Of a stretch of 64,000 bases of DNA, positions 1-61,873 are shown one piece after another. The position numbers and the translations under genes were made by a program. A model generated the notes under the pieces. The model did no database searches and was not told the DNA's origin. It saw only the letters and a program-made list of their open reading frames with translations. How positions within the stretch are numbered: position 1 is the first letter of the stretch; every line of letters begins with the position of its first letter. The stretch is from Octopus sinensis (Eukaryota). The stretch covers positions 46,252,001-46,316,000 of the forward strand of contig NC_043000.1 of assembly GCF_006345805.1 (NCBI RefSeq), given 5' to 3'.

Positions 1-313
1 TTTTTGTAGGCCTGCTACTTATTCTATTGGTCCCTTTTGCTGAACCACTAAGTTACGGGGACGTAAACACGCCAGCATCGGTTGTCAAGGATGTTGGTGG
101 GGACAAACACAGACACACAAACACACACACATATATATATATATATACATATATACGATGGGCTTCTTTCAGTTTCTGTCTACCAAATCTACTCACAAGG
201 CTTTGGTCGGCTCGAGGCTATAGTAGAAGACACTTGCCCAAGGTACCACGCAGTGGGACTGAACCCGGAACCATGTGGTTCGTAAGCAAGCTACTTACCA
301 TACAGCCACTCCT
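1..313 (-). mobile_element. tRNA-derived SINE family A, copy truncated at window edge, with central (CA)/(TA) microsatellite
   Basis: Reverse complement of the family seen complete at 38107-38509; tRNA-like head GGAGTGGCTGTATGGTAAG...GGTTCAGTCCCAC on the minus strand. Confidence 0.85.
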
Positions 314-652
314 ACACCTGTATTGGTATTAAAAAAAAACATTTGTCAATATATTTCACACTACATTCACATAAATCCAGCAGTTTCCTTTTATGTTTTA
401 GAATAGTCCATCAACAAGATAGCAATGCAATTATATAAATATTGATACTGGGATAGCATTATGAATACAACTGAAAAAGATGTGTTGTAAATATTCATGT
501 ATGTATTTTCATTTATTGGACTTCAGTGAAGAATGAAAACATTGAATAAAGAAAGCATATGCAGTTATCAATGTGTTTATATGAAAAAAGTTTCAAATAA
601 AAGAGTGAGACCTTCGAGAATACGTGATCATTTAGAAACAAAGCATCTAGAT

Positions 653-3002
653 CAGGGGTATGAAACATATGGCCCACAGGCCTGCTGCAGGGTTTCATCC
701 AACCCATGAGATGACTTACAAAAGTGTAAAAATTATATATATTTTCTTACTACTGTGAATGTTGATTGTTTGTATATGACTGATTGTTGTGTATAATGGT
801 TCAATTTCTAATAGAAAAAAACTCCTTTAAATTATTTAAAGATTTGTTTAAATATTGTATTGGAATAAATATATATTTTTTGAAATTAATTCAATGACTA
901 ACGTGTTTCTGTTTTTTAGGTGAACATTTTGCCTTGTTTAACCTTACCTAAAATGTCTTTGTCTAAGAAGAGAAAAGAGGATACAGAGTGTAGATTATTT
1001 CAAGAAAAGTGGTTCTTTTCCTGTTCATTTGTGGAGGTGAATGGGAAACCTGTGTCCTTGGTGTGTTTGCAGCAGGTTTCAGTGCTCAGAGAATATGACA
1101 TTTGGCACCATCATGCCAACAAATACGATAACTTGCAAGGACAAATGAGAAGAGAAAAGATAAATAAATTGTTAGCACATCAACCCAAAGCTGAGATATC
1201 AGCCAGGTAGCTGTAAAAGCTAGCTACCTTGTTGCTAGAGAAATAGTATTAGCATCAAAACTGTACTGTGATGGGGAGTTCATGAAAATATGCATATTGA
1301 AGGCTGCAGAAATTGTATGCCTTGAGAAGTGACAGACTTCTGCCTACATTAGCCTGACGAGAAGCACTGTGGCAGATAGGATTTCAGATCTTTCTGCAGA
1401 TTTGGACAGGCAACTGAAGCACAAATTCAAGTAATTTATTGCATATTGGGTTGCAATTGATGAGACCATAGACATTTCAGATGTTGTGCAACTGGCCATA
1501 TTCTTTTGTGGTGTAAACGAGATGTTGACCATCACTGAGGAGTTTCTGGAGCTGGTTCCTATGTTGGACACCACAATAGCAAATGACATTTTCGTCTCTC
1601 TCGTTGGAGCACTGGACAGGGTCAGAATTAACTGGGCCCATGCTGTCAGAGTGGCTACAGATAGCACTCCATCATTGATTGGGAAAAAGCAGGTGTTGTG
1701 AAGCAGTTCAGAGAGAATGTACTGACTGCAAATGGAGGATGTGATTTTTGAATATTTCATTGCATTTTGCAAGTCGTTCAAAATGGATCACATCATGGAA
1801 GTGGTTGTCTGAACTGTTAATTTCATCCAAACTAAAGATCTGAATCACTGTCAGTTTGATAATCTTCTCAGTAATATAGGCATTACCTATGACTTGCCAT
1901 ATCTATCACACCAAGGTAAGGTGATTAAGCCGAGGTGCCATGTTGAAGCACTTCTTTAATCTACGAAAAGAAATTGAACAGTTCATGGGGGAAAACGGTA
2001 AACCAGTGTTAGAATTTCAATCATCAGAAGGGCTCCAAGATTTAGCATTTATCATGGATATTATAGAGCACTTGAATAATCTGAACAAAATGCTGCAAGG
2101 CCACAAAAAATTTGTCACCCAGTATTTTGAAAGCATGTGTGTGTTCAAGTTGAAGCTAACTTTCTGGGAGACACAATATTTTCTTTGTCTAAAAGAAAAT
2201 GTCGTCGAGACCTCAGATAATGTTGACATGAATTGGTACAAAGACAATATCATGGGATTGCTGCAAGAATTTGAGCAACCATTTCAGATTTTTGATGAAG
2301 TTGAGAGATATATTTTACAGTTTTTCGCTCACCAATTATAGTCAATACAACATGAAATGATTGACTTGCAGCATGATTCAAATTTGAAGAATAAATTTAC
2401 CTTGGTGGGCTTGGTCACATTTTATCAGTATCTCTTGCCAAAGTACCCCAAATTGACAGCCCTTGCTGCTAAAGTTTTGCACATGTTCAGGACTACCTAC
2501 CTTTCTGAACAAGTATTCTCTGTAATGAGCATCAATAAATGAAGCTGTGCTCAAGGCTCACACAAAGGCACCTAAATAACATCTTGAAATTGGCTGCTAC
2601 TCAGGATTTGATACCTGATATTGATGCACTTGTGAAGGAGAAAAGATGCCAAGTTTCAGGAACGTACCAAAAATAAATGATAAACAATAATAAAAGTGTT
2701 TTTAAATGTTTTGCAAAGTGCTTTTTTTAAAATTATGAATTGTATACAGTTACAAGGGAGTGTGATGTCTCAGTCTTCTTTAACATTTCCCACTTTCACT
2801 CGGTCAATGTTTTGCAAAAAAAAATTGTTATTTAAACCTGAACATTTTCAGAATGTACTTTTTTACACTAAAACAAAGAGAAAATTTTGAAATTGTTATT
2901 TATAGGTTCTTATGCCATGATTTTACTGGTCCAGTCCAGCCCATCTGAGATCAAATTGGGTTGATATGTTGTCCATGAACTAAAATGAGTTTGGCAATCC
3001 TG
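653..3002 (+). mobile_element. Full-length hAT (Buster/Charlie, SPIN/GTF2IRD2-like) DNA transposon, inactive
   Basis: Left end CAGGGGTATGAAAC; right end reverse complement CAGGATTGCCAAAC; perfect 8-bp TSD ATCTAGAT at 645-652 and 3003-3010 with central TA. Confidence 0.93.
953..2676 (+). pseudogene. SPIN/GTF2IRD2/EPM2AIP1-like transposase pseudogene
   Basis: MSLSKKRKEDTECRLFQEKW...KPVSLVCLQQVSVLREY; LAIFFCGV; QDLAFIMDIIEHLNNLNKMLQG; TTYLSEQVFSVM; ends DALVKEKRCQVSGTYQK*. Broken by stops and frameshifts. Confidence 0.9.
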
Positions 3003-3279
3003 ATCTAGATAAAGCAAAAGAAGGACACAAGCAATTGCCATGACTTAAAAATAAATTCAAAATTTAATCAAGAACTAATGAGTTAATTGTTAAAACAAAG
3101 TAACCAACTAAAGAAAGGATAAGGAGCATCTTAAAAATGTTCATAATTAATTGCTAAATATGAAAAGATTTACATAATATTGGTGAAAATCTCAGCTTTT
3201 CAGTTGTGAATGGAATTATAAATATATGATGGCCTTGGTAAAATTAATATAATGTCACTATTTCCTCTCAGCAATAGTT

Positions 3280-3385
3280 ATCAATAATAATGATGATGAT
3301 AATGACGATGACAATGACGACGACGACGACGAAGATGATGATAAAGGTGATGATGATGATGACGAGGATGATGAAGATGATTTTA
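3280..3385. repeat. (GAT/GAC)n microsatellite
   Basis: Direct reading. Confidence 0.95.
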
Positions 3386-4173
3386 CTCTCATCAATATTT
3401 ATCAGTCAACAAGAATTAATAAGTTGATAGATGACATTGTAAAAAAATATTGTGGTGATTCAGAAGCCACAATTTTTTTTTACAACTTGATGAGACAATT
3501 TTTACTTGAAAATGAATGCTTGCCATTAGTGTCACGTGCATTCTTCAAATACTAATCAAGAAGTTATTTAAGACTTCCTATTTACTGAACAATTGAAAAC
3601 TAACACAAAAGGTTTTCTAATTTACAGACCAGTTGACCACTTTCATCATCTCACTGATGCCACCGAATGTGTTACTGATGGAGCACCTATTGTGATTAGT
3701 TTGCTTTTGTAGATTTTTCAGCACATTAAAAGAGGCAGCTCCAAACATTATTACAATTCAATAACACTTAGATGTGAAACAGCTTAGTAGTAAGACTACA
3801 TAAAAATTTTAACCATGTTTTTATGGCTGTAAATAAAATAAAAAGTCATTTTGAATACCTATATTTTCTGGAAACTTTCCCATGAACATGAACAAGAATT
3901 TGAGCGTCTTTTACTAGATATGGAAGTTCAACGTCTTTTGTAAGGGAAACTGTCAGCAACACTTTTAGGATATCTATGATATTATTTTGTAATATTTTAA
4001 GTCAGATGGTGGGTAAATGTGTAATGAACTGGAAAAACAAACATCTGACATCACTTATCTTTCTGACATCTTCAATAAATTGATTGAAATAAACATTAAA
4101 ATTATAGGAAAACAAAATGAAACTTATTGAAATAAAGGGAAGAATAAATTCTATTATCAATAAAATGTTTCTG

Positions 4174-4737
4174 GGACAACTACTCACATGGATTATTTAC
4201 CCCTTGAACAGTTGACTTCATAAGATAGTCACCCTTGAATAATTTTACCCTTTAGCACATATAGGACTGAAGGTAAAGTGTAGGCAACAAATAGCAAAGT
4301 TGTGGTGAGGGTTGAAGGTATAGTGGATGCTGAATTTGTGATGTAAGTCGCATCTGTGGTGTAGATGTTAATTTATGAAATTGAATTGTAGATGGGATAA
4401 ATTAAAGTGGTAGTGTGTGTTCAAATTATGAGGGAGATTTATGTGGAAATTTGGTGTAGGCTGAAGTCACAGTGCTGGTTAAAGTTGCAGTGTAGGTCAT
4501 ATCTTGTAGATGGTGAAGCTTGAGGCTGTGGTGTATTTGGTGTACATTCAAGGTGCAGTATGTATTGAAGTTGCAGCATAACAGATGTGGTAGTGTAGAT
4601 GATGTTGATTAAAGTTGTAGTGTGAATTGAAGTTGTGTTGTAGATAGCTTAAGATGAAGTTGAAGTGTAAATGCCATAGACAGAGGCAATTGTCTTCGTG
4701 GTGGCTATCAGGGATAATTATCTAGGGGCAGATGTCC
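4174..4737. mobile_element. Putative non-autonomous DNA element with short imperfect TIRs and internal degenerate tandem repeats
   Basis: GGACAACTAC at the left end; GCAGATGTCC (rc GGACATCTGC) at the right end; internal GTTGAAGTTGTAGTGTAG-like repeats; interrupts the Buster reading frame. No clear TSD. Confidence 0.5.
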
Positions 4738-6589
4738 AATTGCCCACCTAAATTACATTCTGTAAAAATACCATTGCAAGGATTTGGTTCTTTAGCAGTT
4801 TCAAATTAAGCAAATGATAAAAGAAAATATTGATTTAATGCTAGATACAGATAAGGAATGTTAATGCTGCCATCTTTACGATGACCAGATTTAAAACTTT
4901 GATGAATTGAAAATAACATAGTAGGATTTAATTCATTTCATTCTGAGACAAATTTTACTCATCCTAATTCACTTCAAGAATGAAAAGAATTATAATAAGA
5001 GTCTGAAACTCATGTGCTGTTTTACAAAATGGATATGAAACATTCTGGCCAGAGATGCAAAACATGTATCCTAAGCTTTAGCAAGGAAAAAAAAGTTGCT
5101 GCTCATTATTTTTCACTTTACATACTTGGTGAAGAGTGGACGCAATGTTGTGTTGCTGTTGTTATGTAAGCAGTGCAATAAAATATCAATAAATGAAAGA
5201 AAGGACTTAAGATCTTATTTTCCAAGCATTAAATCTGATACTGAAAATTTGCAAATTATCATCGACCTCAGGCTAACCATTAAATTATATATATTGATTG
5301 TTAAATGCATTAGGTTAACACATTTTTTTAGTTCTGAAATAATCAATTCTGCTGACGTTCTTTGTTTCTAAATAAATTTGTATCAAAGTTACACTATGAG
5401 TACAAATATGAAAATGATAGTGAGTTTCTCCTTGCATAATAATCCTTTGTAATTCTACAATTATGACTATAATTAATTACTGTTAAATTTATTAGCTTTT
5501 ATCAATATTTGAAAGGGAACGATAAACAACAACAACAAAAAATATTTTAGAATCACAGCTACACAAGAACTGTTGGTTCAGTTTTGACTATTTACTTTGA
5601 AAGCTATAAACGGTATTCAAAATTAAAATTTCAAAGCACCAAACTATCTGCAGTACATGATAAAATATTTTACTAAACAGGTATTTTTTTATCCAGTATC
5701 TGATTGATATAAATTGATTGCAAGCAAATTATATCATACTACTCCTAATTAATCTTCCCAAATAAAAAAAAAGTTATAACTTATTATCATTGTTAATTAA
5801 GGGGAAAGATAATGAATAAAGAGAGCTGTCTCATATAAAAATAAGATGGTGCAAAATATTAGAACAGAATATTTTCATTAAGTGTATGGATGTTTGATAT
5901 GGAACCACAATTTTGAACTGTATGAATATGTACATTTTATGCATGTATGCCTACATGCATGTACAATTAATAAATACATATTTTTAATAATGAAAGGATC
6001 TCTCTTATGGTTTGATAAAAGAAGTAACCTACAGGTTAATCATTGTAGAACAAAGGAGCTGAAAAGAAATATATATATATTTTTAGCTTTAGTTCTAATT
6101 GCACTCAGCAACCTAAAATAATTTTCCTGATTTTGAACATTATTTCTCATCAAACTTATTTCTCATCAAATGTCTTCTAGGATTAGAAAACTGTTTTTAA
6201 AACAATCCTTGCCTTCCAAACTGTCAAATTTGAATTAATTAGAATGGTTAATGGTAAAATATGCAGATACTCAAATTAGAAAACCATATGACAAATTATA
6301 TATGATGATTTGCAAATGAAAAAGACAGCAAATAGAGAAATGTCAAATAGAATGTAAATAAAAATATAGATGGAAATAAAATGCTAAATCTTAAAATAAT
6401 TAACAACAAAACAAGAAAGTATTTCTTGTTGAGTGATTTTAGAAAAATTTGTTGCAAAAATGTTACGCATATTCTTCAAAATTATGTATTGTCAAATAAT
6501 AATAACATGAATATAGCTTATTGAGTGAATTGGAGAACTTGTGCATGGTTGCTTGACTTGCGAAAGATATCTATTAAATATCTCTAAAA

Positions 6590-7200
6590 TCAAAATAATA
6601 GTAATAATAATATTATTGTATACAGTGCTCAGGTGCACCACAACTTGTCAAAAGTGCATATAAAGCATATTCATTAATGTACAAATGTTTGGGAAGTGAA
6701 TAGCGTATGAGTCAGATACATGCTTGCATGTGTATGGAGGGGAGAAAATCAGGTGTAGTGTTGGCGAATATCAGGAAGCATGGAAGTTTTGAAGGATGCA
6801 GTGCTCTGACAACTAACGACTGATTTGTTCCATACTTCAGCAACTCCTAGAATGAAAAAATGTTTCCGAAAGTCATGGGAGCCGTGCTGTTTTCTGACTT
6901 TGTAAACATGTCTATGGGTGTTAGACAGGTGGAGTTTGAAAAGATGCTCAGAGTTATTGTTGGTAAGATGGTTAATAATTTTATGGGTGTCTGCCAAGTC
7001 AGCTGCCAGACGTCAGAGTTTCAATGTATCCATGCCCAGGGAAGTAAGGTGTTCAGAATATGGCAAATGCCTGATGGAGGGTATTCTCTTGGTTGCACGT
7101 CGCTGAACGGTTTCCAGACGATTAATATCCTGGGCAAGATAGGGGTTCCAGCCCGGTGTTGCAAATTCCAGGTGATGATATAAATAATGGTGCCATCCTA
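6590..7200 (-). mobile_element. 5'-truncated CR1/L2-group LINE (ORF2 C-terminus, 3' UTR, (ATT)n tail)
   Basis: HHLEFATPGWNPYLAQDINRLETVQRRATKRIPSIRHLPYSE...LADTHKIINHLTNNNSEHLF...FRKHFF...AEVWNK; tail attattatt near 6590-6615. Confidence 0.88.
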
Positions 7201-7397
7201 GCTACTTCTTCTAAAATAATGGGATGGTTATGACACAAATAATCATAAGTTTTCTTAATCAAGGTTGACTTACACATCAGGAATAACAACAACATGATTA
7301 TTACATAAAAAAGACAGCATTCAAATAATTGCTTTTAATTCTGTCATTATTCTGTTGATAAACTTGGGTGCCATAAACTATCTTACAGTTAGTTGTG

Positions 7398-7402
<5 letters not shown>

Positions 7403-7452
<50 letters not shown>

Positions 7453-7500
7453 CATCCTCAATCATCCCCACCACCACCACCACCATCGTCATCATCATTA
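7403..7500. repeat. (CAT)n/(CAC)n microsatellite
   Basis: Direct reading. Confidence 0.95.
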
Positions 7501-7503
7501 TTT

Positions 7504-7970
7504 ATAATATTTGGGAATATAAAATTTCCTTCTTCAGATAACCCTAGGAATTGATAGAGTTACTGCTACAATCGGTTTTCCACCGTTTTTTTTTTTTGTT
7601 CTTTCCAGAGGTGTCTCTGCAGTGATCTCATGAATCTCCTTCGGGAGTTCCTCATGAGAAGTGCATGAGGTTCATTTTTGATAGCATGCTCATGTATTAT
7701 TTATAAATAAAAACAAAGAAAGAAGGAGTAAAAAAAAAAGGTAACTACACATATAATACATAACTTAGAAGCAGCGCTACAGAAGTGCCAGCACACATGA
7801 GCTTGAGACATGGTCACCCTCATACATTTCTTATAAGGAATTCTGGAAGGAGCTTCGTGAGACCACTGCAGAGACGCTTGGGAAAGGGAGAAAAAAACCG
7901 TTGGAAAACCGATTGTAGTAGTGACTCAATCAATTAATGAAGAAGGAATTTTTATATTCTGAAATATTAT
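7504..7970. mobile_element. Fold-back MITE with ~190-bp imperfect terminal inverted repeats
   Basis: Left arm GAATATAAAATTTCCTTCTTCA...CTACAATCGGTTTTCCACCG...GTCTCTGCAGTGATCTCA matches the reverse complement of the right arm TGAGACCACTGCAGAGAC...CGTTGGAAAACCGATTGTAG...TGAAGAAGGAATTTTTATATTC. Confidence 0.85.
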
Positions 7971-8384
7971 ATCAGACTATATATGATTAAATTATAACAG
8001 TTATTATAGTCCATTGTTGTAACTATAGTGCATTGTTGTGCCATTCAAAACACATTATTTTTTAAAAACAATGCACAATGCTTCAAGCAAACTACAATAC
8101 CCTCCTTTTCTTAAATTTAAATAATGCTATTGGCTAAATATTGATGATTGATTAGGAGAACGTTTAAAAATTTCAGTAATAAATGCTTTGCAGAATTTCT
8201 TTCTGTTCTTTACATTCTGATTTCAAATCACTTTGAGATCAATTCCTGGTGTCATTAAGATGAAGTACCGGTCAAGTACTGAGATTGATCTAAATGACTA
8301 ACCTTACTTTCTCAAATTGTGCCCTTGGCTTATTTTAGAAGCAAATGTTTAATTGTTTCCCATTTTCATTCTGAGTTCTAATAT

Positions 8385-8600
8385 CAATTTCAAATTTTGC
8401 ACAAGGCCAGCAATTTTGTGGGAGAGGGTAAGTTGATTGCATTGACTCCAATGTTCAACTAGTTCTTATTTTATGAACCCTGAAAGGATGAAAGGCAAAG
8501 TTAGTCACTGCAGTATTTGAAGTCAGAATGTAAAGGTGGACAAAATGTTGCAAAGCATATTAACTGGTGCTCTGACAATTTTGCCAGCTTGCTACCTTAT
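8385..8600 (-). mobile_element. SINE family B (putative Meta-domain tRNA SINE), degenerate
   Basis: Reverse complement of the family at 30786-31023 (GCCTTTCATCCTTTC...AAGTACCAG core). A + strand fragment lies at ~8170-8340. Confidence 0.65.
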
Positions 8601-9404
8601 TCTAAGTTCTAATATTGCTAAGATTAAATTTATTTCCCTTTCTTTAGTGGTTGTGAAAATAAGTAGAGTGAAGTGCTTGAGTTGATATATAATCAAAAGT
8701 GTGGTGATATATTTCACTTGAACCTGGCAACTTGGCTGGCTACTGAGAAACTGACAGTTGTTGGGTTTATACTTAAGGGCATTGCATCATGGAAAAGGGA
8801 AATGTATTTAGCAGTGCTTGTGATTCAGGACATAAAGAGCAATGAGACTAAGAAAATTTCATCAGCTATTAAGGACTCATACTTTGTATAAACGAACTCA
8901 TCAATGCAGTTTAGGTCATTCAGTCGAAAATGTTTACTGTTAAACCTCACTTATCAATATGAACAACTAGAGGTATTTGATTGTATCGCCTTCACAAGTA
9001 TTCATATTGGTTTCAGTCAGTGTTTTCCTGTGTTTCCAGATGAGATCAAACTATTTGCATTGGACCAATAGATTTAGAAAAGAAATGGCTGCAGTTATTT
9101 GATGTTAACATCCACTACAAGTCTGGGTCAATAATCTGAAAATTAATCGATAATTTATAAAATTGAGTGCATATTAATGAGACTTCAAGCTATTAAATCG
9201 ACACAACTGTGAAATAACCCTTTCAGAACAGAGCTGAGTACATTTGCTTTATTTCATGCAAAAAAAATCCATTATTCTCATCATATTTGACCATGCTAAA
9301 ATCGAATTTTACAAGCCACCCATATTTGTTTGGCATGATCCTAATCTTATATGTAATATTAATACGAGAGATGGTTGTATTTTAAGGTGGCTATAACAAA
9401 TATA

Positions 9405-9715
9405 ACAGTGACGGCACATGGACTAGTGGCTAGAGCAGTGGACTAATGGTCGAGGGATCATGGGTTCGAATTGCAGACTGGGCAATGTGTGTATTTATGA
9501 GTGAAACACCTAAGCTTCACAGGGCTCCAGCAGAAGGTAATGGTGAACTTCTACTGACTCATTCGTCACAGCTTTCTCTCACTCTTTCCTCTTGCATCTA
9601 GCAGCTCACCTGCGATGGACTGGTGTCCTGTCCAGGTGGGGAACCAATACACTAATGAAACTGGGAAACTGGCCCTTATGAGCCAGGCATGGCTTGAGAA
9701 GGAGCAAACAACAAC
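9405..9715 (+). mobile_element. tRNA-derived SINE with V-SINE-like central domain
   Basis: A/B boxes (TGGACTAGTGG...GGTTCGAATT); CCTGCGATGGACTGGTGTCCTGTCCAGG at ~9609-9636; (AAC)n tail; 12-bp TSD ATAACAAATATA at 9393-9404 and 9716-9727. Confidence 0.75.
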
Positions 9716-9727
9716 ATAACAAATATA

Positions 9728-10975
9728 CAAGGGTGGATTGAAAAGTTCAGTGGATGACCATGAAGGAGCAATGCTAGAACTGTAAAATCTTACATGTATT
9801 CATTTCAATCTTACTTATTAATAACTGTATTGTAAACTGACATCTGACTGTTCAAAGAAGACTTCAGATCTAACTAGTAGTGACATCGCTTGAAAATAGA
9901 CAAGATGTGGCATCATGATGCTATCATCAACAAATAGAAAAATGGTTTAGCCCCCAATGACATTCATACTGACATGGTTGCATCAGAGGATGACAATCCA
10001 GCTTTATCAACTGTGCAAAAGGGGGCAGCTGAATTTAGGCAGGGAAAGAAGGAGTGTTGATGATAACCCAAGGCCTAGATGTACTGCAACTGCAACGAGT
10101 GAGGAAAACATTGATTGTGTTTACCTCATGATGGTGGATGACAGGTGAATGACTATAATTCAAATAGCCAATGCTATTAGCATACCATGTGAGAGAGTTG
10201 AGAATATTCTGCACAATGTACTTGAACTTGGCATGATGAAGGATTCTGCTTGGTGAGTGTCATATATTCTAACACTTAATCAAAAGCACATCGAGTTGAT
10301 TACATCACAGGAAAATCTGACATTGTTTCTGGCAGTCCCAGCTGGTTTTCTTGAATGTTTCCTAACCCACCATGAGTGTTCGGTTCATCACTTTGAGCCA
10401 GAAGCATAGATATAATCCATGCAGTGGAAACACCTCTCCTCCCCTGATCCAAAGAAGGTCAAGGTAGTTTCATCAGCAGAGAAGGTGATGGCCTCAGTTT
10501 TTTGAGGATGCAAAAGGCATTGTGTTTATTGACTATCTTCAAAAGGGCCATGCCATCAATGGAGAGTACTATGCTAACCTACTGAAGCAGTTATGAAACA
10601 CTATGAAGACCAATCACCCAGGAAAACTTATGAAAGGGCTAAGTCCTTTGTTTCAATGGCTGCTGTGCATGATTGTTACTTTGTTCTAGTTGATCAGCCT
10701 CCCTATTCTCCTGATTTGGCCCCATTTGACTATCATTTATTTCCCAACGTGAATAAACACTTGGCTAGGAACCAGTATTGTAGTGTTGAGGATGTCATAT
10801 CTGCTGTTCACAACGTTTTTGATCAGGAAGATGACAGTTTCTTCCCCAATGGGATCCAAGCAGTGCAACACCAATGGAGGAAGTATGTAAGCCATGATGG
10901 GATCTATGTTGAAAAATAAATATCATCCGGTCACATTACATTAGAGTATCTTATGCACTTTTCAGTTAACCCTCA
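9728..10975 (+). mobile_element. Full-length inactive mariner (irritans-like, DD34D)
   Basis: TA flanks; TIRs CAAGGGTGGATTGAAAAGT / rc TGAGGGTTAACTGAAAAGT; motifs HHFEPE...SMQWKH...KVMASVF, QPPYSPDLAPFDYHLFPN, QHQWRKYVSHDGIYVEK*. Multiple stops. Confidence 0.9.
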
Positions 10976-11499
10976 TACATTTACACAGAAATACTATAGC
11001 CAGATGTCTTTTCTAATACCAATAACTATAGAGAGTGATAATGTGTAATGGGTAAAGTGAAAGAGACAGAGAAATGTGTGGAAGAGCTTAATTGCAATTC
11101 ATAGAGTTATTAAATAATATTATTGAGAGAATAGAAAATAACACTTAAAGCTTCACTTCATTCAGAAATATTGGTTCTTTGGAATAATCCATCACTAAAT
11201 ATTGAAGTGAATAGATACTGCTGACTTTGTAGCCACATGAGACTGATTTCATTTTCCTTATAACAACAGTTAGCATTATATCTTGCTATACCCATGAGCA
11301 TATGTAGACCGGAATAAAGTTGTAAATACATTCAGATAGTTGGGAATAGAAGTTTATTCTATTATCTTATGTTTGTTACTTACATTTACTGATCGGATCC
11401 TTTAACTTTATAGTTGACATATTTATTTGTTAATGATTCCAGTCTTGTAATTCTGTGCAAACACCAGTGACAAACAGAATTTAACATAGTTGATTACAG

Positions 11500-15430: not shown

Positions 15431-16129
15431 GAATTTGGCTATTTACCAAAGTCATACCAAAAAACAAATCCTTTGAATATAAAACTGGGTAAATTTTTTC
15501 CAGCATTACCATCATTATTGTTATAGCCATCATTAAGTTTTGACCAACAGTTCTGCTCCACCTATTTTCAATTTAGCCTATTTCCCCTTATTTCAGTCTT
15601 GCATAATCTATTCTGTGAGACTCAATAACTTATGATCTGACAGACCTTATCATTTCTTGAAAATTTTCCGATTACCTACTGGAAAATTGTAGCAGATATG
15701 TACCTAGTATTTTTATTGCACAATTTCATCTTAAAACCATACATCCTTTGCAACTTGTATTCCACATTTATGCTGCTAAACATTAAACATCCAAGAGATC
15801 ATGCTCACTATATTTTCTCTTCAGCCTCAACTAATTTTTTTGTTTTAAGTTCCCATATATTTCTTAGTACTTTGCAGCCAGACAAATATTTGATAACATT
15901 CATTGACTTCATTTCATAAATATACTAGCTTCATTTCAAAGCTTTCTGAAGTTTACATACGAATGACAAACATTGAAAAACAAATTGTTTCTGTGATACT
16001 TTAATTTTTGTTTGCAATATGTAATTAACAAATCATAAAGATAAATATGCAAACAATTAAATGTGATATTGCATTTTGCTAGTTGCATATCTCATTGTCA
16101 GACCTCGAAAATGCATCACAGTAAAATAT

Positions 16130-16347
16130 TGGCTTCAAATTTTGGCAGGCACAAGGCCAGCAATTTTGTGTGGTGGGGTAAGTAAATTACATTGATTTCA
16201 GTGCTCAACTGGTACTTACTTTTTCAACCTCAAAAGGATGAAAGGTGAAGTCAATGTCAGAGCAAATTTGATCTGAAAATGTAAAAACAGATGAAATGCC
16301 ACTAAGGATTTTGTCCAGTGTACTAAGGTTTCTGCCAGATCACTGCC

Positions 16348-16348
<1 letters not shown>
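16130..16348 (-). mobile_element. SINE family B (putative Meta-domain)
   Basis: AAGGATGAAAGG core and GCACAAGGCCAGCAATTT tail; abuts the AAT array. Confidence 0.7.
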
Positions 16349-16437
<89 letters not shown>

Positions 16438-16724
16438 GAAAAAATAGCAAAGTATCAGGATCTAGCTATTGAATTATAGAGACTATGGAAAGTGCAGATA
16501 AAAATGTATCCCAGTAGTTATAGGTTCATTGGGAACTATCCCTAAAGATCTGAACAGATGGAAAGAGGAAATAGGCATACAACCCAGTTTAGTGCAGCTG
16601 CAGAAAACAGTGTTATTAGGGACAGATAAGATGCTTAGGAGGGTTCTTGGCATTTAAGGTTACTTGTTGTAGCCCGATGTTAGACTTCTTTTCTTTTCCA
16701 ACAGTCTAATCTGTTGAGTGTATA

Positions 16725-16784
<60 letters not shown>

Positions 16785-17091
16785 GAAAAAATAGCAAAGT
16801 ATCAGGATCTAGCTATTGAATTATAGAGACTATGGAAAGTGCAGATAAAAATGTATCCCAGTAGTTATAGGTTCATTGGGAACTATCCCTAAAGATCTGA
16901 ACAGATGGAAAGAGGAAATAGGCATACAACCCAGTTTAGTGCAGCTGCAGAAAACAGTGTTATTAGGGACAGATAAGATGCTTAGGAGGGTTCTTGGCAT
17001 CTAAGGTTACTTGTTGTAGCCCGATGTTAGACTTCTTTTCTTTTCCAACAGTCTAATCTGTTGAGTGTATATGATAATAATAATAATAATA

Positions 17092-17128
<37 letters not shown>

Positions 17129-17415
17129 GAAAAAATAGCAAAGTATCAGGATCTAGCTATTGAATTATAGAGACTATGGAAAGTGCAGATAAAAATGTAT
17201 CCCAGTAGTTATAGGTTCATTGGGAACTATCCCTAAAGATCTGAACAGATGGAAAGAGGAAATAGGCATACAACCCAGTTTAGTGCAGCTGCAGAAAACA
17301 GTGTTATTAGGGACAGATAAGATGCTTAGGAGGGTTCTTGGCATCTAAGGTTACTTGTTGTAGCCCGATGTTAGACTTCTTTTCTTTTCCAACAGTCTAA
17401 TCTGTTGAGTGTATA

Positions 17416-17475
<60 letters not shown>

Positions 17476-17759
17476 GAAAAAATAGCAAAGTATCAGGATC
17501 TAGCTATGAATTATAGAGACTATGGAAGTGCAGATAAAAATGTATCCAGTAGTTATAGGTTCATTGGGAACTATCCCTAAAGATCTGAACAGATGGAAAG
17601 AGGAAATAGGCATACAACCCAGTTTAGTGCAGCTGCAGAAAACAGTGTTATTAGGGACAGATAAGATGCTTAGGAGGGTTCTTGGCATTTAAGGTTACTT
17701 GTTGTAGCCCGATGTTAGACTTCTTTTCTTTTCCAACAGTCTAATCTGTTGAGTGTATA

Positions 17760-17822
<63 letters not shown>

Positions 17823-18110
17823 GAAAAAATAGCAAAGTATCAGGATCTAGCTATTGAATTATAGAGACTATGGAAAGTGCAGATAAAAATGTATCCCAGT
17901 AGTTATAGGTTCATTGGGAACTATCCCTAAAGATCTGAACAGATGGAAAGAGAAATAGGCATACAACCCAGTTTAGTGCAGCTGCAGAAAACAGTGTTAT
18001 TAGGGACAGATAAGATGCTTAGGAGGGTTCTTGCATCTAAGGTTACTTGTTGTAGCCCGATGTTAGACTTCTTTTCTTTTCCAACAGTCTAATCTGTTGA
18101 GTGTATATGA

Positions 18111-18142
<32 letters not shown>

Positions 18143-18450
18143 TAATAATAATAATAATATAATAGAAAAAATAGCAAAGTATCAGGATCTAGCTATTGAA
18201 TTATAGAGACTATGGAAAGTGCAGATAAAAATGTATCCCAGTAGTTATAGGTTCATTGGGACTATCCCTAAAGATCTGAACAGATGGAAAGAGGAAATAG
18301 GCATACAACCCAGTTTAGTGCAGCTGCAGAAAACAGTGTTATTAGGGACAGATAAGATGCTTAGGAGGGTTCTTGGCATCTAAGGTTACTTGTTGTAGCC
18401 CGATGTTAGACTTCTTTTCTTTTCCAACAGTCTAATCTGTTGAGTGTATA

Positions 18451-18495
<45 letters not shown>

Positions 18496-18781
18496 GAAAA
18501 AATAGCAAAGTATCAGGATCTAGCTATTGAATTATAGAGACTATGGAAAGTGCAGATAAAAATGTATCCCAGTAGTTATAGGTTCATTGGGAACTATCCC
18601 TAAAGATCTGAACAGATGGAAAGAGGAAATAGGCATACAACCAGTTTAGTGCAGCTGCAGAAAACAGTGTTATTAGGGACAGATAAGATGCTTAGGAGGG
18701 TTCTTGGCATCTAAGGTTACTTGTTGTAGCCCGATGTTAGACTTCTTTTCTTTTCCAACAGTCTAATCTGTTGAGTGTATA

Positions 18782-18829
<48 letters not shown>
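16349..18829 (+). repeat. Tandem array of 7 copies of a ~290-bp R4/Dong-clade LINE 3' end, each separated by (AAT)n
   Basis: Units start at 16437, 16784, 17128, 17475, 17822, 18164 and 18495; translation EKIAKYQDLAIEL*RLWKVQIK/CIPVVIGSLGTIPKDLNRWKEEIGIQPSLVQLQKTVLLGTDKMLRRVLGI* fits the C-terminus of an RLE-endonuclease non-LTR element. Confidence 0.9.
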
Positions 18830-18830
<1 letters not shown>

Positions 18831-19195
18831 ATGAACCTCTGCCAAGGCAACACCAATGTCCTTTCAACGAATAGTCAGGGATGATGTTTAGAATGAGAAT
18901 ATCGGAAATAAACTCGACTGCTCTCACAAATGAGAATACTAAAAACGAACGTGACTGCTCACAAAAACTAAGCAAAAAAAAAAACGGAAAAATAATCCAG
19001 AATCCTTGTCCAGGAGCAGATTGATCCCAAAATCTAATCAGTTAGTGCCAGTCATAAAGCCAAACACCCTTGAAAGTTTCATCCGAATCCATCCAGCAGT
19101 TCTTGAGATATCTGTTGACATATCTGTTTGTCCACAGACAAACAAGCATACAAACATGACTGAAAAAATACCTCCTCCTTTGCTAAGGCAGTGGC

Positions 19196-19197
<2 letters not shown>
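18830..19197 (+). mobile_element. Non-autonomous Helentron/HINE-like element (5' end missing), flanked by (AAT)n
   Basis: ACCTCTGCCAAGGC start; AAAGTTTCATCCGAATCCATCCAGCAGTTCTTGAGATATC core; ACAAAC repeats; 3' CCTCCTTTGCTAAGGCAGTGG hairpin-like end; homologous copy at 62915-63275. Confidence 0.55.
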
Positions 19198-19257
<60 letters not shown>

Positions 19258-19269
19258 TAATAACAATAA

Positions 19270-21259
19270 CACTGGCCAAAAAGTTGTTACTTTTTTCTGC
19301 TGACCTAATTTAAGACCATTGAGTTTTAAAATGGCAACAGTTTCTTTCTATCACATCTAGCTTTTTTTCTATGGGCTGGCCCAAACTGTTCTCACCCATA
19401 GCTCCATGCTTGAAATGTTTGAATTACCCTGATTCTCTTTGCTATATATGTGGGTGTTTTACAGTACCAAGTCAAAGAATGAATGTTAGTGACATTGTGA
19501 AAAGATCCTACTTGGCTTACTTAAAGATTAAAGTTGGTGATCAGGATAAATCATGAGCCCAGACAATGTATGTAATCCCTATGTAGAAAACCTATGTCAA
19601 TACACAAGGGCACTGGGAAACAACTAAAATCTGACATTTCTATGATATGGTGGGAGCCAAAGAACCATGTAAATGATTGCTACTTTTGTCTCACAATGAC
19701 ACCAGGAGAACATGACAGAAAATAAGTTACTCAAATCTGGATTCAGCATTTCATTCAGTGTTTCATTTCGATGTAATGCTTATACCCATTATCAAAGATC
19801 TACCTTCAGTGCAAGATGAAAGTGATATATGTGAAGTAAATATAAATCATGAATATGACAGTGATATAGACTTTGCAGAAACATCAATTAAAGAACATGA
19901 AACTTCAACCAGGCAGAACTTATTGATTTAGTTAGAGAGACCTAGGACTGTCAAAAGAGTTATCAGAACTGTTAGCTTCTAGGCTTAAAGAGCAAAATTT
20001 GTTGCAAGATCTCTTGGCATTCTTTACAACTGGAAAATATTTTGTTTACTGTTGTGATATGGCGGGACTGTTAAACGTGATAGCCGTTGAACGGTATGGT
20101 CCTAGTGAATGGAAACTCTTCATAGATAGTTCAAAGAGTCTAAGATGTGTATTGCTCTATACTGGGAACTTGTTTGATGCACTTCCTATTGGTCACTCTG
20201 TACGCTTAAAAGAGAATTATGCTCACATAAAAGCTGTATTAGATTTACTTAATTATGATGAGCACAAATGGGTCACATGTGTTGATCTAAACATCGTCAA
20301 CTTTTTACTTGGCCAACAAGGATGGTATACAAAATATCTGTGTTTCCTGTGTTTGTCGAGAGACAAACATTGGGAACAGAAGCTCTGGCCAGTTAAGAAA
20401 AGCTTGACTGTTGGGGAGAAGAATATCATACACCAACCACTTGTCGAGAGAGAGGAAATTATCTTTCCACTCCTTCATATTAAACTAGGACTAATGAAGT
20501 AATTTATCAAAGCTCTTAATGTGAAGGTAACTGTTTCAAATTCATATGTATATATCCTGACTTAAGTTATGATAAAATAACAGCTGGTGTTTTTGATGGG
20601 CTACAAATTAGAAAGTTAACAAAATGCCAGAATTTGTCATGCTCAATGGCTGACATAGAAAAAAGAGCATGGTATTCATTTGTGGATGTTGTGAAAGGAT
20701 GTTGGGGGAGAGAAAGGCTGCAAACTGCAAGGATTTGGTGGAGACATTACTTGATAGCTTTCATCATTTAGGCTGCAACATAAGCATAAAGCTTCATTTC
20801 CTCAATAGCCATCTCGATGACTTTCCTGCTAGTCTCAGAGACATGAGTGATGAGCATGGTGGGCATTTTCATCAGGCAATCAAGATTATGGAAGCGAGAC
20901 ATGATGGCAGACTACTGTTGGAGTATTCAAAGAGATTGTGCAGACATGAAACACTCCAGACACACTTGCAAGTGGAAGTTTGTTCTGTGAGCATGAAGAT
21001 ATGTATATGATGGTTTGTGTTTTATCCATCATATTAGAAAATTAACAGTAGGTATTTAGTGAAAGGTGATGCTCACTAACATTTCATAATCTATTGACAT
21101 TTATAACCTAAGGTTTGAAGCTATTAGACTTAGTGAACTATCCTAACCAGGCAAATTATTTATACAGAACATCATAAAATAGGGATATGCTATAGAATAA
21201 AAACCTGATGTGTTAGGGGGAAAATGGATGCCATATTTGAAACCAACATTTCAAAATTA
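19270..21259 (+). mobile_element. Chapaev3-like (CMC) DNA transposon with degenerate transposase, right end truncated
   Basis: TAA|CACTG left end; CLNYPDSLCYICGCFTVPSQR...KVGDQDKS; EWKLFIDSSKS.RCVLL; VCVDLNIVNFLLGQQG.YTKY.CFLC; FPLLHIKLGLMK; GCNISIKLHFLNSHLDDFP...DEHGGHFHQAIK. Confidence 0.8.
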
Positions 21260-21710
21260 ACTGTGGGATTCAGGGCGATTACCTGACCAGACATCAGAAA
21301 CTGGACATTTTTGTTGTGAATAAAAAAGAAAGAACATGCATGATAATCAACATAGCATGTCTCAACAGGATCAAAGAGATAAAATAAGAAAAACTGAACA
21401 ATTGTGATGATTTGAAGTGGGAAATATAAAGGTTGTGATCAACAAGGAGAGTAGATGTAATATCAATAGTAATTAGCACACTTGGAAGTATGAGCACTCA
21501 ACTACTAACATAGCTCAAAAAGATTGGTACCAATGTAAGGGCAGAACATCTACAAGAATCAGCATTGCTTGGAACTGCAAGAAGTCTTCACAGGATTCTT
21601 GAAGCATGATCAGTAAACAAATGACACCTTAATCTGCTGGCTGAAGACTGCTGATGCTTCACATTATAACCAGCAAAATGAGCTGAGAGTTTTCATCAAA
21701 TAATAATAAT
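21260..21710 (+). mobile_element. R4/Dong LINE 3' fragment including degenerate PD-(D/E)xK RLE motif, (AAT)n tail
   Basis: LWD..DYLTRHQKLDIFVVNKKERTCMIINIAC...DDLKWEI*RL...ESALLGTARSLHRILEA*, then 3' UTR and AATAATAATAAT. Confidence 0.8.
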
Positions 21711-61035: not shown

Positions 61036-61129
61036 ATGGTGATGTAAGAAGTGGACTTTGTTTATAGTCACCAGGATTGAAATCCAGCCATAATAAATAA
61101 TAATAATAATAATAATAATAATGAGAATA

Positions 61130-61354
61130 ATACTCTTTACTCTCTCTTTTCCTTGTTTCAGTCACTTGACTGCAGCCATGCTGGAGCATTGCTTTTAGTC
61201 GAGGAAATTGACCCCAGTACTTTGTAAGCATAGTACTTATTCTATCGGTCTCTTTTCCCGAACCACTAAGTTACAGGGATGTAAACATACCAGCATCAGT
61301 TGTCAAGTGATGTTGGGAGCACAAACACAGACACACAAACATATACACATATAT

Positions 61355-61413
<59 letters not shown>

Positions 61414-61586
61414 TACGACGGGTTTCCGACTACCAATTTCCATCTACCAAATCCACTCACAAGGCTTTTGTCAGCCTGAGGTTATATTAGAAGACACTTA
61501 CCCTAGGTTCCATGAAGTGGGTCTGAACCTGGGACCATGTGGTTGGTAAGCAAGGTACTTACCACGCATCCACTCCTGTGCCTATA
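61130..61586 (-). mobile_element. SINE family A, complete
   Basis: Reverse complement of 38107-38509. Confidence 0.88.
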
Positions 61587-61591
61587 GGCAC

Positions 61592-61625
<34 letters not shown>

Positions 61626-61833
61626 GCAACAACATTTGACATCAAAATCAGAATGCTAAAAAGATAAGGTGACAGAGTGTGATTTGAAGATGAACAACAC
61701 AGAGGGTTCATTATTGGTTTCATGGAAGTCAACTAGACTTCAGGGAGGAAATGACCCAAGATATCTGGTACTGTGAGATCTGTCTCAAAGATTTCACCAA
61801 AGACCTGGTTTTAAGGAAATATTGCAAATAATG

Positions 61834-61873
<40 letters not shown>

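What the first reader, a model, noticed from the sequence alone, without database searches (positions are those of the whole stretch)
16349..18829. Satellite born from a LINE 3' end: 7 x (R4/Dong fragment + AAT spacer)
All seven units begin at the same 5' truncation point and share the same inactivating lesions (in-frame TAG; extra A in ATAAAAATGT). They were therefore amplified from one dead insertion rather than inserted independently. Dong-type R4 elements are known to target TAA microsatellites, so insertion gives a unit with (AAT)n on both sides, a ready substrate for unequal exchange or slippage. Each unit retains the 3' UTR hairpin (TTAGACT...AGTCTAA) and tail, so array transcripts might be remobilised in trans as a SINE-like element (inference). 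A T/C variant (GGCATTTAA in units 1 and 4, GCATCTAA in the others) records the duplication history.
Basis: partly seen in the sequence, partly recalled or inferred. Interest (0 to 1): 0.8.

Follow-up and report, generated by a model that had tools for sequence, protein, structure and literature searches.

The report
Seven-copy tandem array of LINE tail
A dead tail-end fragment of a Dong-like LINE, a type that inserts into TAA repeats, has been copied in place into seven near-identical tandem units separated by AAT repeats in an octopus genome; this is a clean but small example of the known way transposons seed tandem repeats.

Summary
Window 16349-18829 holds seven 288-291 bp cores, each followed by an (AAT)n tract (TRF period 344, 7.1 copies).

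Each core is the last 72 codons plus the 70-nt 3' UTR of a very abundant, decayed LINE family. The family has a C-terminal CCHC motif and a restriction-like endonuclease, and its copies end in (AAT)n, so it is Dong-like.

All seven units share the same 5' truncation point and seven substitutions found in no other sampled copy. A 27-mer carrying three of those substitutions occurs exactly seven times in the 2.72 Gb genome, all in the array. The truncation junction occurs only here, plus one unrelated single copy. The units differ from one another by one substitution and some 1-bp homopolymer deletions, which are probably long-read consensus errors. They are about 10% from every dispersed copy.

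So one old dead insertion was amplified in place, and this was not repeated insertion of a short family. Unequal exchange between the flanking AAT tracts is the most likely route (inferred).

- The hairpin it named is not the family's conserved one.
- Remobilisation has left no descendants.
- "Satellite" overstates a single 2.4 kb locus.

This is a known kind of event, so interest is modest.

The parts
16125..16348 (+). Upstream flank: an old SINE-like repeat that ends at the (AAT)n tract
   Evidence: about 5144 first-look candidates in the genome. Other copies are 76-81% identical and match query positions ~35-259. One search shows the shared 3' end ...CTGCCAG.TCACTGCCTT.
16349..16436 (+). 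5' boundary microsatellite, (AAT)n of 88 bp with two GAT interruptions; probably part of the original target tract
16437..16727 (+). Unit 1 (291 bp). ORF remnant of 72 codons at 16438-16654, stop TAA at 16655-16657, 3' UTR at 16658-16727, terminal hairpin CAACAG/CTGTTG at 16699-16716. Carries T at variant position 16654.
16728..16783 (+). Spacer 1, pure (AAT)n, 56 bp
16784..17074 (+). Unit 2 (291 bp, C variant)
17075..17127 (+). Spacer 2, 53 bp (AAT)n with AT-for-AAT irregularities. It would be 56 bp if three missing A's are consensus errors.
   Evidence: the error reading is inference.
17128..17418 (+). Unit 3 (291 bp, C variant)
17419..17474 (+). Spacer 3, pure (AAT)n, 56 bp
17475..17762 (+). 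Unit 4 (288 bp, T variant, three 1-bp homopolymer deletions)
17763..17821 (+). Spacer 4, pure (AAT)n, 59 bp
17822..18110 (+). Unit 5 (289 bp, C variant, two 1-bp deletions)
18111..18163 (+). Spacer 5, 53 bp (AAT)n with three AT-for-AAT irregularities
18164..18453 (+). Unit 6 (290 bp, C variant, one 1-bp deletion)
18454..18494 (+). Spacer 6, pure (AAT)n, 41 bp
18495..18784 (+). Unit 7 (290 bp, C variant, one 1-bp deletion)
18785..18829 (+). 3' boundary microsatellite, (AAT)n of 45 bp
18834..19195 (+). Downstream flank: a copy of a ~380-bp repeat family ('B'), about 20 nt short at its 5' end here. Other copies are bounded by (AAT)n on both sides and end in a hairpin directly before (TAA)n.
   Evidence: about 4989 first-look candidates, 81-84% identity; flanks of seven copies.
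19196..19269 (+). (AAT)n tail after family B

Best explanation
A Dong-like LINE inserted into a (TAA)n microsatellite. This LINE type has a reverse transcriptase, a C-terminal CCHC motif and a restriction-like endonuclease, and it targets TAA repeats. Reverse transcription stopped early. The cDNA joined the target at a 2-nt AT microhomology, leaving a 291-bp stub: the last 72 codons plus the 70-nt 3' UTR, with (AAT)n on both sides. The stub then aged as a single dead copy and picked up about as many private substitutions as any other copy of its family. Much later, misaligned exchange or replication slippage between the two flanking (AAT)n tracts produced a dimer. The resulting 347-bp repeat (291-bp core plus 56-bp spacer) then supplied long homology for further unequal exchange, up to seven copies. 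Microsatellite slippage afterwards altered some spacers to 59 and 41 bp. The array is most likely a neutral by-product with no function.

Shown: the unit's identity, the single origin of the units, the absence of dispersed copies carrying the array's markers, and the age contrast. Inferred: the recombination mechanism and the order of events.
For: Identity of the unit:
- Dispersed copies continue 5' of the unit into an ORF that reads ...CRLC..SEC...RRPD..D..EK..KYQDL.... This is a CCHC motif plus a PD-(D/E)XK restriction-like endonuclease motif.
- Full-length relatives of 1100-1300 aa carry this region at the extreme C-terminus. They have a central RVT_1 domain and no AP-endonuclease match.
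- Their best solved relatives are R2 proteins (E 5e-21), against 1e-10 for L1 ORF2p.

TAA targeting:
- 20 of 23 dispersed copies are followed by (AAT)n.
- 5'-truncated copies L026, L030 and L044 have (AAT)n upstream.
- A full-length relative sits as three head-to-tail copies separated by (TAA)n.
- The literature says Dong targets TAA repeats, including DongBg in a snail (PMC3812793). Dong-R4 LINEs are abundant in Octopus (PMC13282606, PMC9115989).

Single origin:
- All seven units have the same 5' end.
- Seven substitutions private to the array are shared by all units.
- A 27-mer holding three of them occurs exactly seven times in 2.72 Gb, all in the array.
- The junction pattern occurs in the array, in one unrelated 78%-identical single copy with 1 mismatch, and in five 2-mismatch places that were not examined.

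Age contrast:
- The unit has 7 private substitutions and 14 differences from the family majority. Dispersed copies average 6.4 and 16.5.
- The units differ from each other by a single substitution.

AAT tracts as exchange substrate:
- Four of six internal spacers are 56 bp, once three AA-to-A dropouts are allowed in each of spacers 2 and 5 (inference).
- A second locus (L045) is a 1458-bp composite unit repeated 2.5 times at 93.8% identity, with unit boundaries in (AAT)n tracts.

The array is 2.5 kb in gap-free sequence, shorter than typical long reads.
Against: - No reads, population data or orthologous loci were available, so the copy number and the timing are unverified.
- Near-identity of the units could reflect continuing homogenisation of an older array and not recent amplification.
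- Sequence alone cannot separate unequal exchange from slippage, rolling-circle amplification or local re-insertion of array transcripts.
- The genome search scores only the best candidates for DNA queries (40 of 2550), so the sample of dispersed copies is small and biased towards those most like the unit.
- R4-clade membership was not tested by phylogeny.
Confidence: 0.7

Rival explanations
1. Retrotransposition built the array. Either transcripts of the locus itself were reverse-transcribed again into the neighbouring (AAT)n tails by a Dong enzyme acting in trans, or a single insertion event produced a concatemer through template jumping of the reverse transcriptase between identical truncated RNAs.
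For: The family inserts into TAA repeats, and each insertion recreates a target, so head-to-tail chains do form (L066; chains of AAT-bounded repeats in the window). Apparently intact Dong-like ORFs of up to ~1300 aa exist in this genome. Uniform 56-bp spacers are compatible with this route. Template jumping by R2-type enzymes is from my own knowledge, not tested here.
Against: No source with the array's private substitutions exists outside the array. The unit's own family shows no open frame above ~400 aa among the 150 copies scored, and its copies differ pairwise by about 10%. The intact families are only 37-39% identical in the matching protein region and have unrelated 3' UTRs. A concatemer made at the original insertion would by now have units as diverged from each other as dispersed copies are, unless it had been homogenised.
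Confidence: 0.1
2. A genome-wide short (SINE-like) family with this fixed 5' end inserted seven times into one microsatellite.
For: One other locus (L044) has the same truncation point in an (AAT)n tract.
Against: The junction pattern with up to 2 mismatches gives 12 hits in 2.72 Gb. Six are in the array. Only one other was looked at (the 1-mismatch hit L044), and it is a 78%-identical copy without the array's markers; the five 2-mismatch hits were not inspected. 21 of 23 sampled dispersed copies continue 5' into the ORF. The shared truncation point is explained by AT microhomology between the cDNA and the AAT target.
Confidence: 0.02
3. The array is real but its copy number, or part of its internal variation, is an assembly artefact.
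For: All seven length differences among cores are 1-bp homopolymer deletions. The irregular spacers look like AA-to-A dropouts. Both are typical of unpolished long-read consensus in repeats. By its statistics the genome is the PacBio-based Octopus sinensis assembly.
Against: The array is only 2.5 kb, inside gap-free sequence with distinct flanks, so single long reads should span it (inference). Units differ in spacer length and at one substitution. No second haplotig copy of the flanks exists that could have been merged wrongly: the best non-self matches are 81% and 84% identical.
Confidence: 0.08
4. Rolling-circle amplification. A unit-length circle was excised by recombination between the flanking AAT tracts, replicated as a concatemer, and reintegrated at the same tract.
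For: The spacers are very uniform at 56 bp and the units are near-identical. This route is proposed in the literature for TE-derived arrays (PMC5932611 introduction).
Against: There is no direct evidence. Unequal exchange explains the same data with fewer steps. Spacers of 59 and 41 bp, and the T variant in units 1 and 4, need later events under either model.
Confidence: 0.08

Closest known systems
Dong (Bombyx mori) and Dong-like elements such as DongBg and DongAg, in the R4 clade of restriction-like-endonuclease non-LTR retrotransposons
   Same: Single ORF with a central reverse transcriptase, a C-terminal CCHC motif plus a PD-(D/E)XK endonuclease, and no AP endonuclease. Copies insert in, and are tailed by, (TAA)n. 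Dong-R4 elements are reported as abundant in Octopus (PMC3812793, PMC13282606, PMC9115989).
   Different: Clade placement by RT phylogeny was not done. No HDV-like ribozyme was detected at the 5' end of a full-length relative (inconclusive). What sits here is only a dead 291-bp stub of an old, apparently extinct octopus family.
TE-derived tandem arrays, such as the R1 array on the D. melanogaster X chromosome, and the 'TE dimer expands into satellite' model (McGurk and Barbash 2018, PMC5932611)
   Same: A site-specific LINE ends up in head-to-tail tandem with target sequence between the units and is then expanded, as in that model. The junctions are tail-to-internal because of 5' truncation.
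   Different: In that model the first dimer comes from two insertions at one site. Here the identical truncation point and the shared private substitutions point to duplication of one old insertion, with the flanking microsatellite as the substrate. The array is tiny (7 copies, 2.4 kb), whereas R1 reaches hundreds of copies.
Partnerships between non-LTR retrotransposons and microsatellites, for example RTE-associated microsatellite families in Lepidoptera (PMC2887409) and the review PMC3812793
   Same: LINE 3' ends are physically coupled to microsatellites, which gives repeated microsatellite-flanking sequences.
   Different: Those cases are dispersed copies that share flanks. This one is a local tandem amplification of a single copy.

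Membership tests
R4/Dong clade LINE | Single ORF with a central reverse transcriptase and no N-terminal AP endonuclease | tested here: met
   Full-length relatives P0005, P0010, P0014 and P0015 (1110-1304 aa) have RVT_1 in the middle and no Exo_endo_phos match. Their best PDB relatives are R2 proteins. This was tested on relatives at 42-46% identity; the sampled octopus copies of this family are all broken.
R4/Dong clade LINE | C-terminal CCHC zinc motif followed by a PD-(D/E)XK restriction-like endonuclease | tested here: met
   Motifs CRLC..(H/Y)IVSEC and RRPD..IID..EK..KYQDL were read directly in P0002, P0003 and many copies. There is a weak zf-RVT match. No dedicated profile exists in Pfam, so this rests on motifs.
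R4/Dong clade LINE | Dong-type target: insertion into (TAA)n with a (TAA)n 3' tail | tested here: met
   20 of 23 dispersed copies have at least three AAT repeats within 60 bp downstream. Truncated copies have AAT upstream. Full-length relatives are chained through (TAA)n.
R4/Dong clade LINE | RT phylogeny places the element in the R4 clade and not in R2, NeSL, Hero or CRE | not testable with these tools
   No reference R4/Dong protein sequences could be obtained, and the PDB holds only R2 and L1 enzymes.
R4/Dong clade LINE | HDV-like self-cleaving ribozyme at the 5' end (PMC3774820) | tested here: inconclusive
   An Rfam scan of the 5' UTR of a full-length relative (L066 3640-4100) gave only low-complexity noise. 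Such ribozymes are hard to detect with these models, and no full-length octopus copy of this family was found.
Satellite DNA | Head-to-tail tandem repetition of a unit | tested here: met
   Seven units with a period of about 344-347 bp.
Satellite DNA | Long arrays or many loci making up a notable share of the genome | tested here: not met
   The marker 27-mer occurs seven times, at one locus. The hairpin-gap-hairpin pattern at this period is found only here.
SINE-like non-autonomous retroposon | Many dispersed copies that share a fixed 5' end and the unit's diagnostic bases | tested here: not met
   The junction pattern is essentially confined to the array. No dispersed copies carry the private substitutions.
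TE tandem formed by double insertion (McGurk and Barbash model) | Units are independent insertions, with differing truncation points or source-derived differences | tested here: not met
   The truncation point is identical, and all units share seven substitutions found in no sampled dispersed copy; three of them, tested genome-wide as a 27-mer, occur nowhere else.

The most novel reading that the evidence does not exclude
LINEs that target microsatellites, and their non-autonomous passengers, routinely plant units flanked by (AAT)n that then amplify by exchange between the microsatellite tracts. On this reading Dong-type elements are a systematic source of tandem repeats and nascent satellites in octopus genomes, and this locus is one caught early. 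The second AAT-bounded tandem duplication (L045) and the frequent chains of AAT-bounded repeats hint at this but do not show it.
Probability: 0.15. Interest if true: 0.55.

Novelty: new member of a known kind. Interest (0 to 1): 0.3.

Why it matters
The locus shows the first steps from transposon fragment to tandem repeat unusually cleanly. The founder can be identified, its age before amplification can be gauged against sister copies, and the flanking microsatellite supplies an obvious exchange substrate. If the pattern is common in octopus genomes, which are rich in Dong-type LINEs and AAT tracts, it would help explain their tandem-repeat content and local structural variation. On its own it is a single 2.4 kb neutral array with no sign of function.

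Tried and rejected
- Fixed-5'-end short family: rejected. The junction pattern is essentially limited to the array.
- Dispersed descendants of the array: none found.
Covariation support is thin, with one compensatory pair.
- Pfam and PDB searches on the C-terminal piece alone gave nothing useful. Full-length relatives were needed.
- Source names for relatives: none on record.
- Rfam scans for a 5' ribozyme and for RNAs around the array returned only low-complexity noise.
- A supplement search for an octopus Dong sequence to compare found only RepeatMasker labels.
- A genome-wide survey for other arrays was not feasible.
- Two searches with a full-length protein failed and still counted against the cap. 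A 405-aa piece worked.
- A three-unit higher-order repeat, suggested by T in units 1 and 4, rests on one site and imperfect spacer agreement, so it is left open.
- Comparing two copies of one locus (L015 and L022) to gauge assembly indel noise gave 7 substitutions and 6 gap events in 3.3 kb. This is suggestive only.

Full report
**The observation.** Tandem Repeats Finder reports a 344-bp period, 7.1 copies, 96% matches and score 4649 at 16380-18829, interleaved with (AAT)n tracts. Anchoring on the core's first and last bases gives seven cores of 288-291 bp. The internal AAT spacers are 56, 53, 56, 59, 53 and 41 bp. An 88-bp AAT tract lies on the 5' side and a 45-bp tract on the 3' side.

The aligned cores differ at only eight columns:
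- Seven are 1-bp deletions inside runs of two or three identical bases.
- One is a T/C substitution, with T in units 1 and 4.

The two irregular spacers look like (AAT)n with A's dropped. If so, four of the six internal spacers are 56 bp. I read the deletions as long-read consensus errors (inference). The genome handle has 2,719,151,902 bases in 13,516 sequences, and one scaffold is 105.89 Mb long. These figures match the published statistics for the PacBio-based Octopus sinensis assembly (PMC10700109).

**What the unit is.** In frame, the core reads EKIAKYQDLAIEL*RLWKVQIKMYPSS.... Dispersed genomic copies are about 90% identical to the unit. 21 of 23 sampled copies continue upstream into an ORF whose intact form reads ...RRPDLVVVDK...IIDFTVPND...EKIAKYQDLAIELQRLWKV.VKCIPVVIGALGT...RILRRVLGI-stop. 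Longer open pieces add a CRLC...SEC zinc motif upstream. This is the CCHC plus PD-(D/E)XK layout of LINEs that carry a restriction-like endonuclease.

An all-against-all profile search found 10,464 relatives. Those of 1100-1300 aa carry this region at their extreme C-terminus. They have a central RVT_1 domain and no AP endonuclease. Their best solved relatives are R2 proteins (E 5e-21), against 1e-10 for L1 ORF2p.

The unit is therefore the last 72 codons plus the 70-nt 3' UTR of such a LINE. The family is very abundant: the 291-bp unit gives 2,550 first-look candidates, and its 148-aa C-terminal query gives 61,024. It is also decayed. Sampled copies differ pairwise by 10.3%, and no open frame exceeds about 400 aa among the 150 copies scored.

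**Target preference.**
- Twenty of 23 dispersed copies are followed by (AAT)n, sometimes after (AAC)n.
- Three 5'-truncated copies have (AAT)n upstream.
- A full-length relative from another organism lies as three head-to-tail elements separated by 34-146 bp of (TAA)n.

This matches Dong, which the literature describes as TAA-specific, including in a snail (PMC3812793). Dong-R4 LINEs are reported as a major and partly recent component of Octopus genomes (PMC13282606, PMC9115989). I could not run an RT phylogeny with reference sequences, and an Rfam scan for the 5' HDV-like ribozyme reported for Dong was negative but inconclusive. 'Dong-like' is therefore well supported by architecture and target, while clade membership is not proven.

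**One insertion or seven?**
- The junction pattern (AAT)3-AG-AAAAAATAGCAAAGTA, with up to two mismatches, has 12 hits in the genome. Six are in the array.
- The one 1-mismatch hit outside it is a single copy only 78% identical to the unit and lacking the frameshift. The five 2-mismatch hits were not examined.
- The shared truncation point is explained by 2 nt of AT microhomology between the LINE sequence (..GGTATAG..) and the AAT target.
- Against 23 dispersed copies, the unit differs from the majority base at 15 columns, one of them the inserted A. Seven of the changes occur in no other copy, and all seven units share them.
- A 27-mer holding three of these occurs exactly seven times in 2.72 Gb, all in the array.
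- The unit's load of private substitutions (7) and of substitutions against the majority (14) matches that of dispersed copies, which average 6.4 and 16.5. The units themselves differ by only one substitution.

So the founder aged as an ordinary dead copy. It was then amplified late, or the array has been kept homogeneous since. Repeated insertion of a short mobile family is excluded. Independent insertions from a lost source are very unlikely.

The TAG also occurs in L016 and L026, and the extra A in L008 and L010.

**Mechanism.** The unit is flanked on both sides by AAT tracts of 45-88 bp. Misaligned exchange or slippage between them gives a dimer, and the 347-bp repeat then supports further unequal exchange. 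The recurring 56-bp spacer fits growth by whole units, and the spacers of 59 and 41 bp fit later microsatellite slippage. A second locus, L045, shows a 1458-bp composite unit with a Dong 3' end, repeated 2.5 times at 93.8% identity, with boundaries in AAT tracts. This supports AAT tracts as exchange substrates in this genome.

All of this is inference from anatomy. Rolling-circle amplification, or re-insertion of locus transcripts, would leave similar products. The T variant in units 1 and 4 hints at a three-unit duplication step, but it is a single site.

**The 3' UTR and remobilisation.** The MFE fold of the unit's 3' UTR, and the consensus fold of 23 copies, give a stem across the stop codon and a terminal hairpin CAACAG-UCUAAU-CUGUUG. 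One compensatory change supports the hairpin.

No copy derived from the array exists elsewhere. The genome does hold Dong-like families with uninterrupted frames of up to about 1300 aa. These are only 37-39% identical to the array's family in the matching region, and their 3' UTRs are unrelated, though they too are TAA-tailed. Trans-mobilisation of the array is therefore unsupported and unlikely.

**Surroundings.** The array sits in a chain of repeats in the same orientation:
- an old SINE-like element ending at the 5' AAT tract;
- the array;
- a 5'-shortened copy of a ~380-bp family whose other copies are bounded by (AAT)n on both sides and end in a strong hairpin before (TAA)n;
- another (AAT)n tract.

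A similar chain lies at 61096-61871. The neighbourhood is otherwise made of transposon remnants. Neither flank has a near-identical second copy in the assembly, so the locus is represented once.

**Comparison and verdict.** Tandem arrays derived from transposons, including site-specific LINEs such as R1, are well known, as is the dimer-then-expansion model (PMC5932611). This case differs in one detail: the first duplication seems to have used the flanking microsatellite of one old insertion, not a double insertion. I found no paper in the held library describing Dong-derived tandem arrays, but the principle is established. It is a new member of a known kind, small, single-locus and probably neutral, so interest is modest.

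Noticed in passing
window 18834-19195; loci L059-L065: Family B, about 380 bp with ~4989 first-look candidates, is bounded by (AAT)n on both sides in several copies. It ends in a 10-bp-stem hairpin (CCTCCGCCTT-CGCT-AAGGCGGAGG) directly before (TAA)n. It is a candidate non-autonomous retroposon that targets TAA repeats, possibly dependent on Dong.
   Followed up: partly
L066 (ENA ERZ25039471 contig_5771) 229-11239: Three head-to-tail full-length Dong-like ORFs (1138, 1138 and 1001 aa) from another organism, separated by (TAA)n tracts of 34-146 bp. This is a tandem chain of whole elements.
   Followed up: partly
L045 (G000 C2:149297500-149301500): A 1458-bp composite unit holding a Dong 3' end and (GTA)n and (AAT)n tracts is repeated about 2.5 times at 93.8% identity, with unit boundaries in (AAT)n tracts. 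It is an older, second example of an AAT-bounded tandem duplication.
   Followed up: partly
G000, many loci; 3' ends in L072-L076: A different Dong-like family has dozens of copies without stops and open frames of up to about 1300 aa. Copies are TAA-tailed and their 3' UTR is unrelated to the array unit. This fits reports of recently active Dong-R4 elements in Octopus.
   Followed up: partly
L044 (G000 C3:41924000-41925200, minus strand): An independent single copy of the same LINE family is truncated at the same AT microhomology point inside an (AAT)n tract. It also has an internal duplication of about 40 bp near the stop codon.
   Followed up: partly
window 61096-61871: Another chain of short repeats separated by three (AAT)n tracts. 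One of the repeats is SINE-like, with an internal CA/TA microsatellite.
   Followed up: no
window 10578-10919 (+), 21268-21600 (+), 32164-31820 (-): A remnant of a mariner/Tc1-like transposase C-terminus (PPYSPDLAP.DYHLF), plus two distant remnants of LINEs with a restriction-like endonuclease. ORFs at 19936-21010 are of unknown kind.
   Followed up: no
L015 versus L022 (G000 C8443 and C2:150745898): The same locus appears twice in the assembly, with 7 substitutions and 6 gap events in 3.3 kb. It is probably a retained haplotig or a recent segmental duplication.
   Followed up: partly
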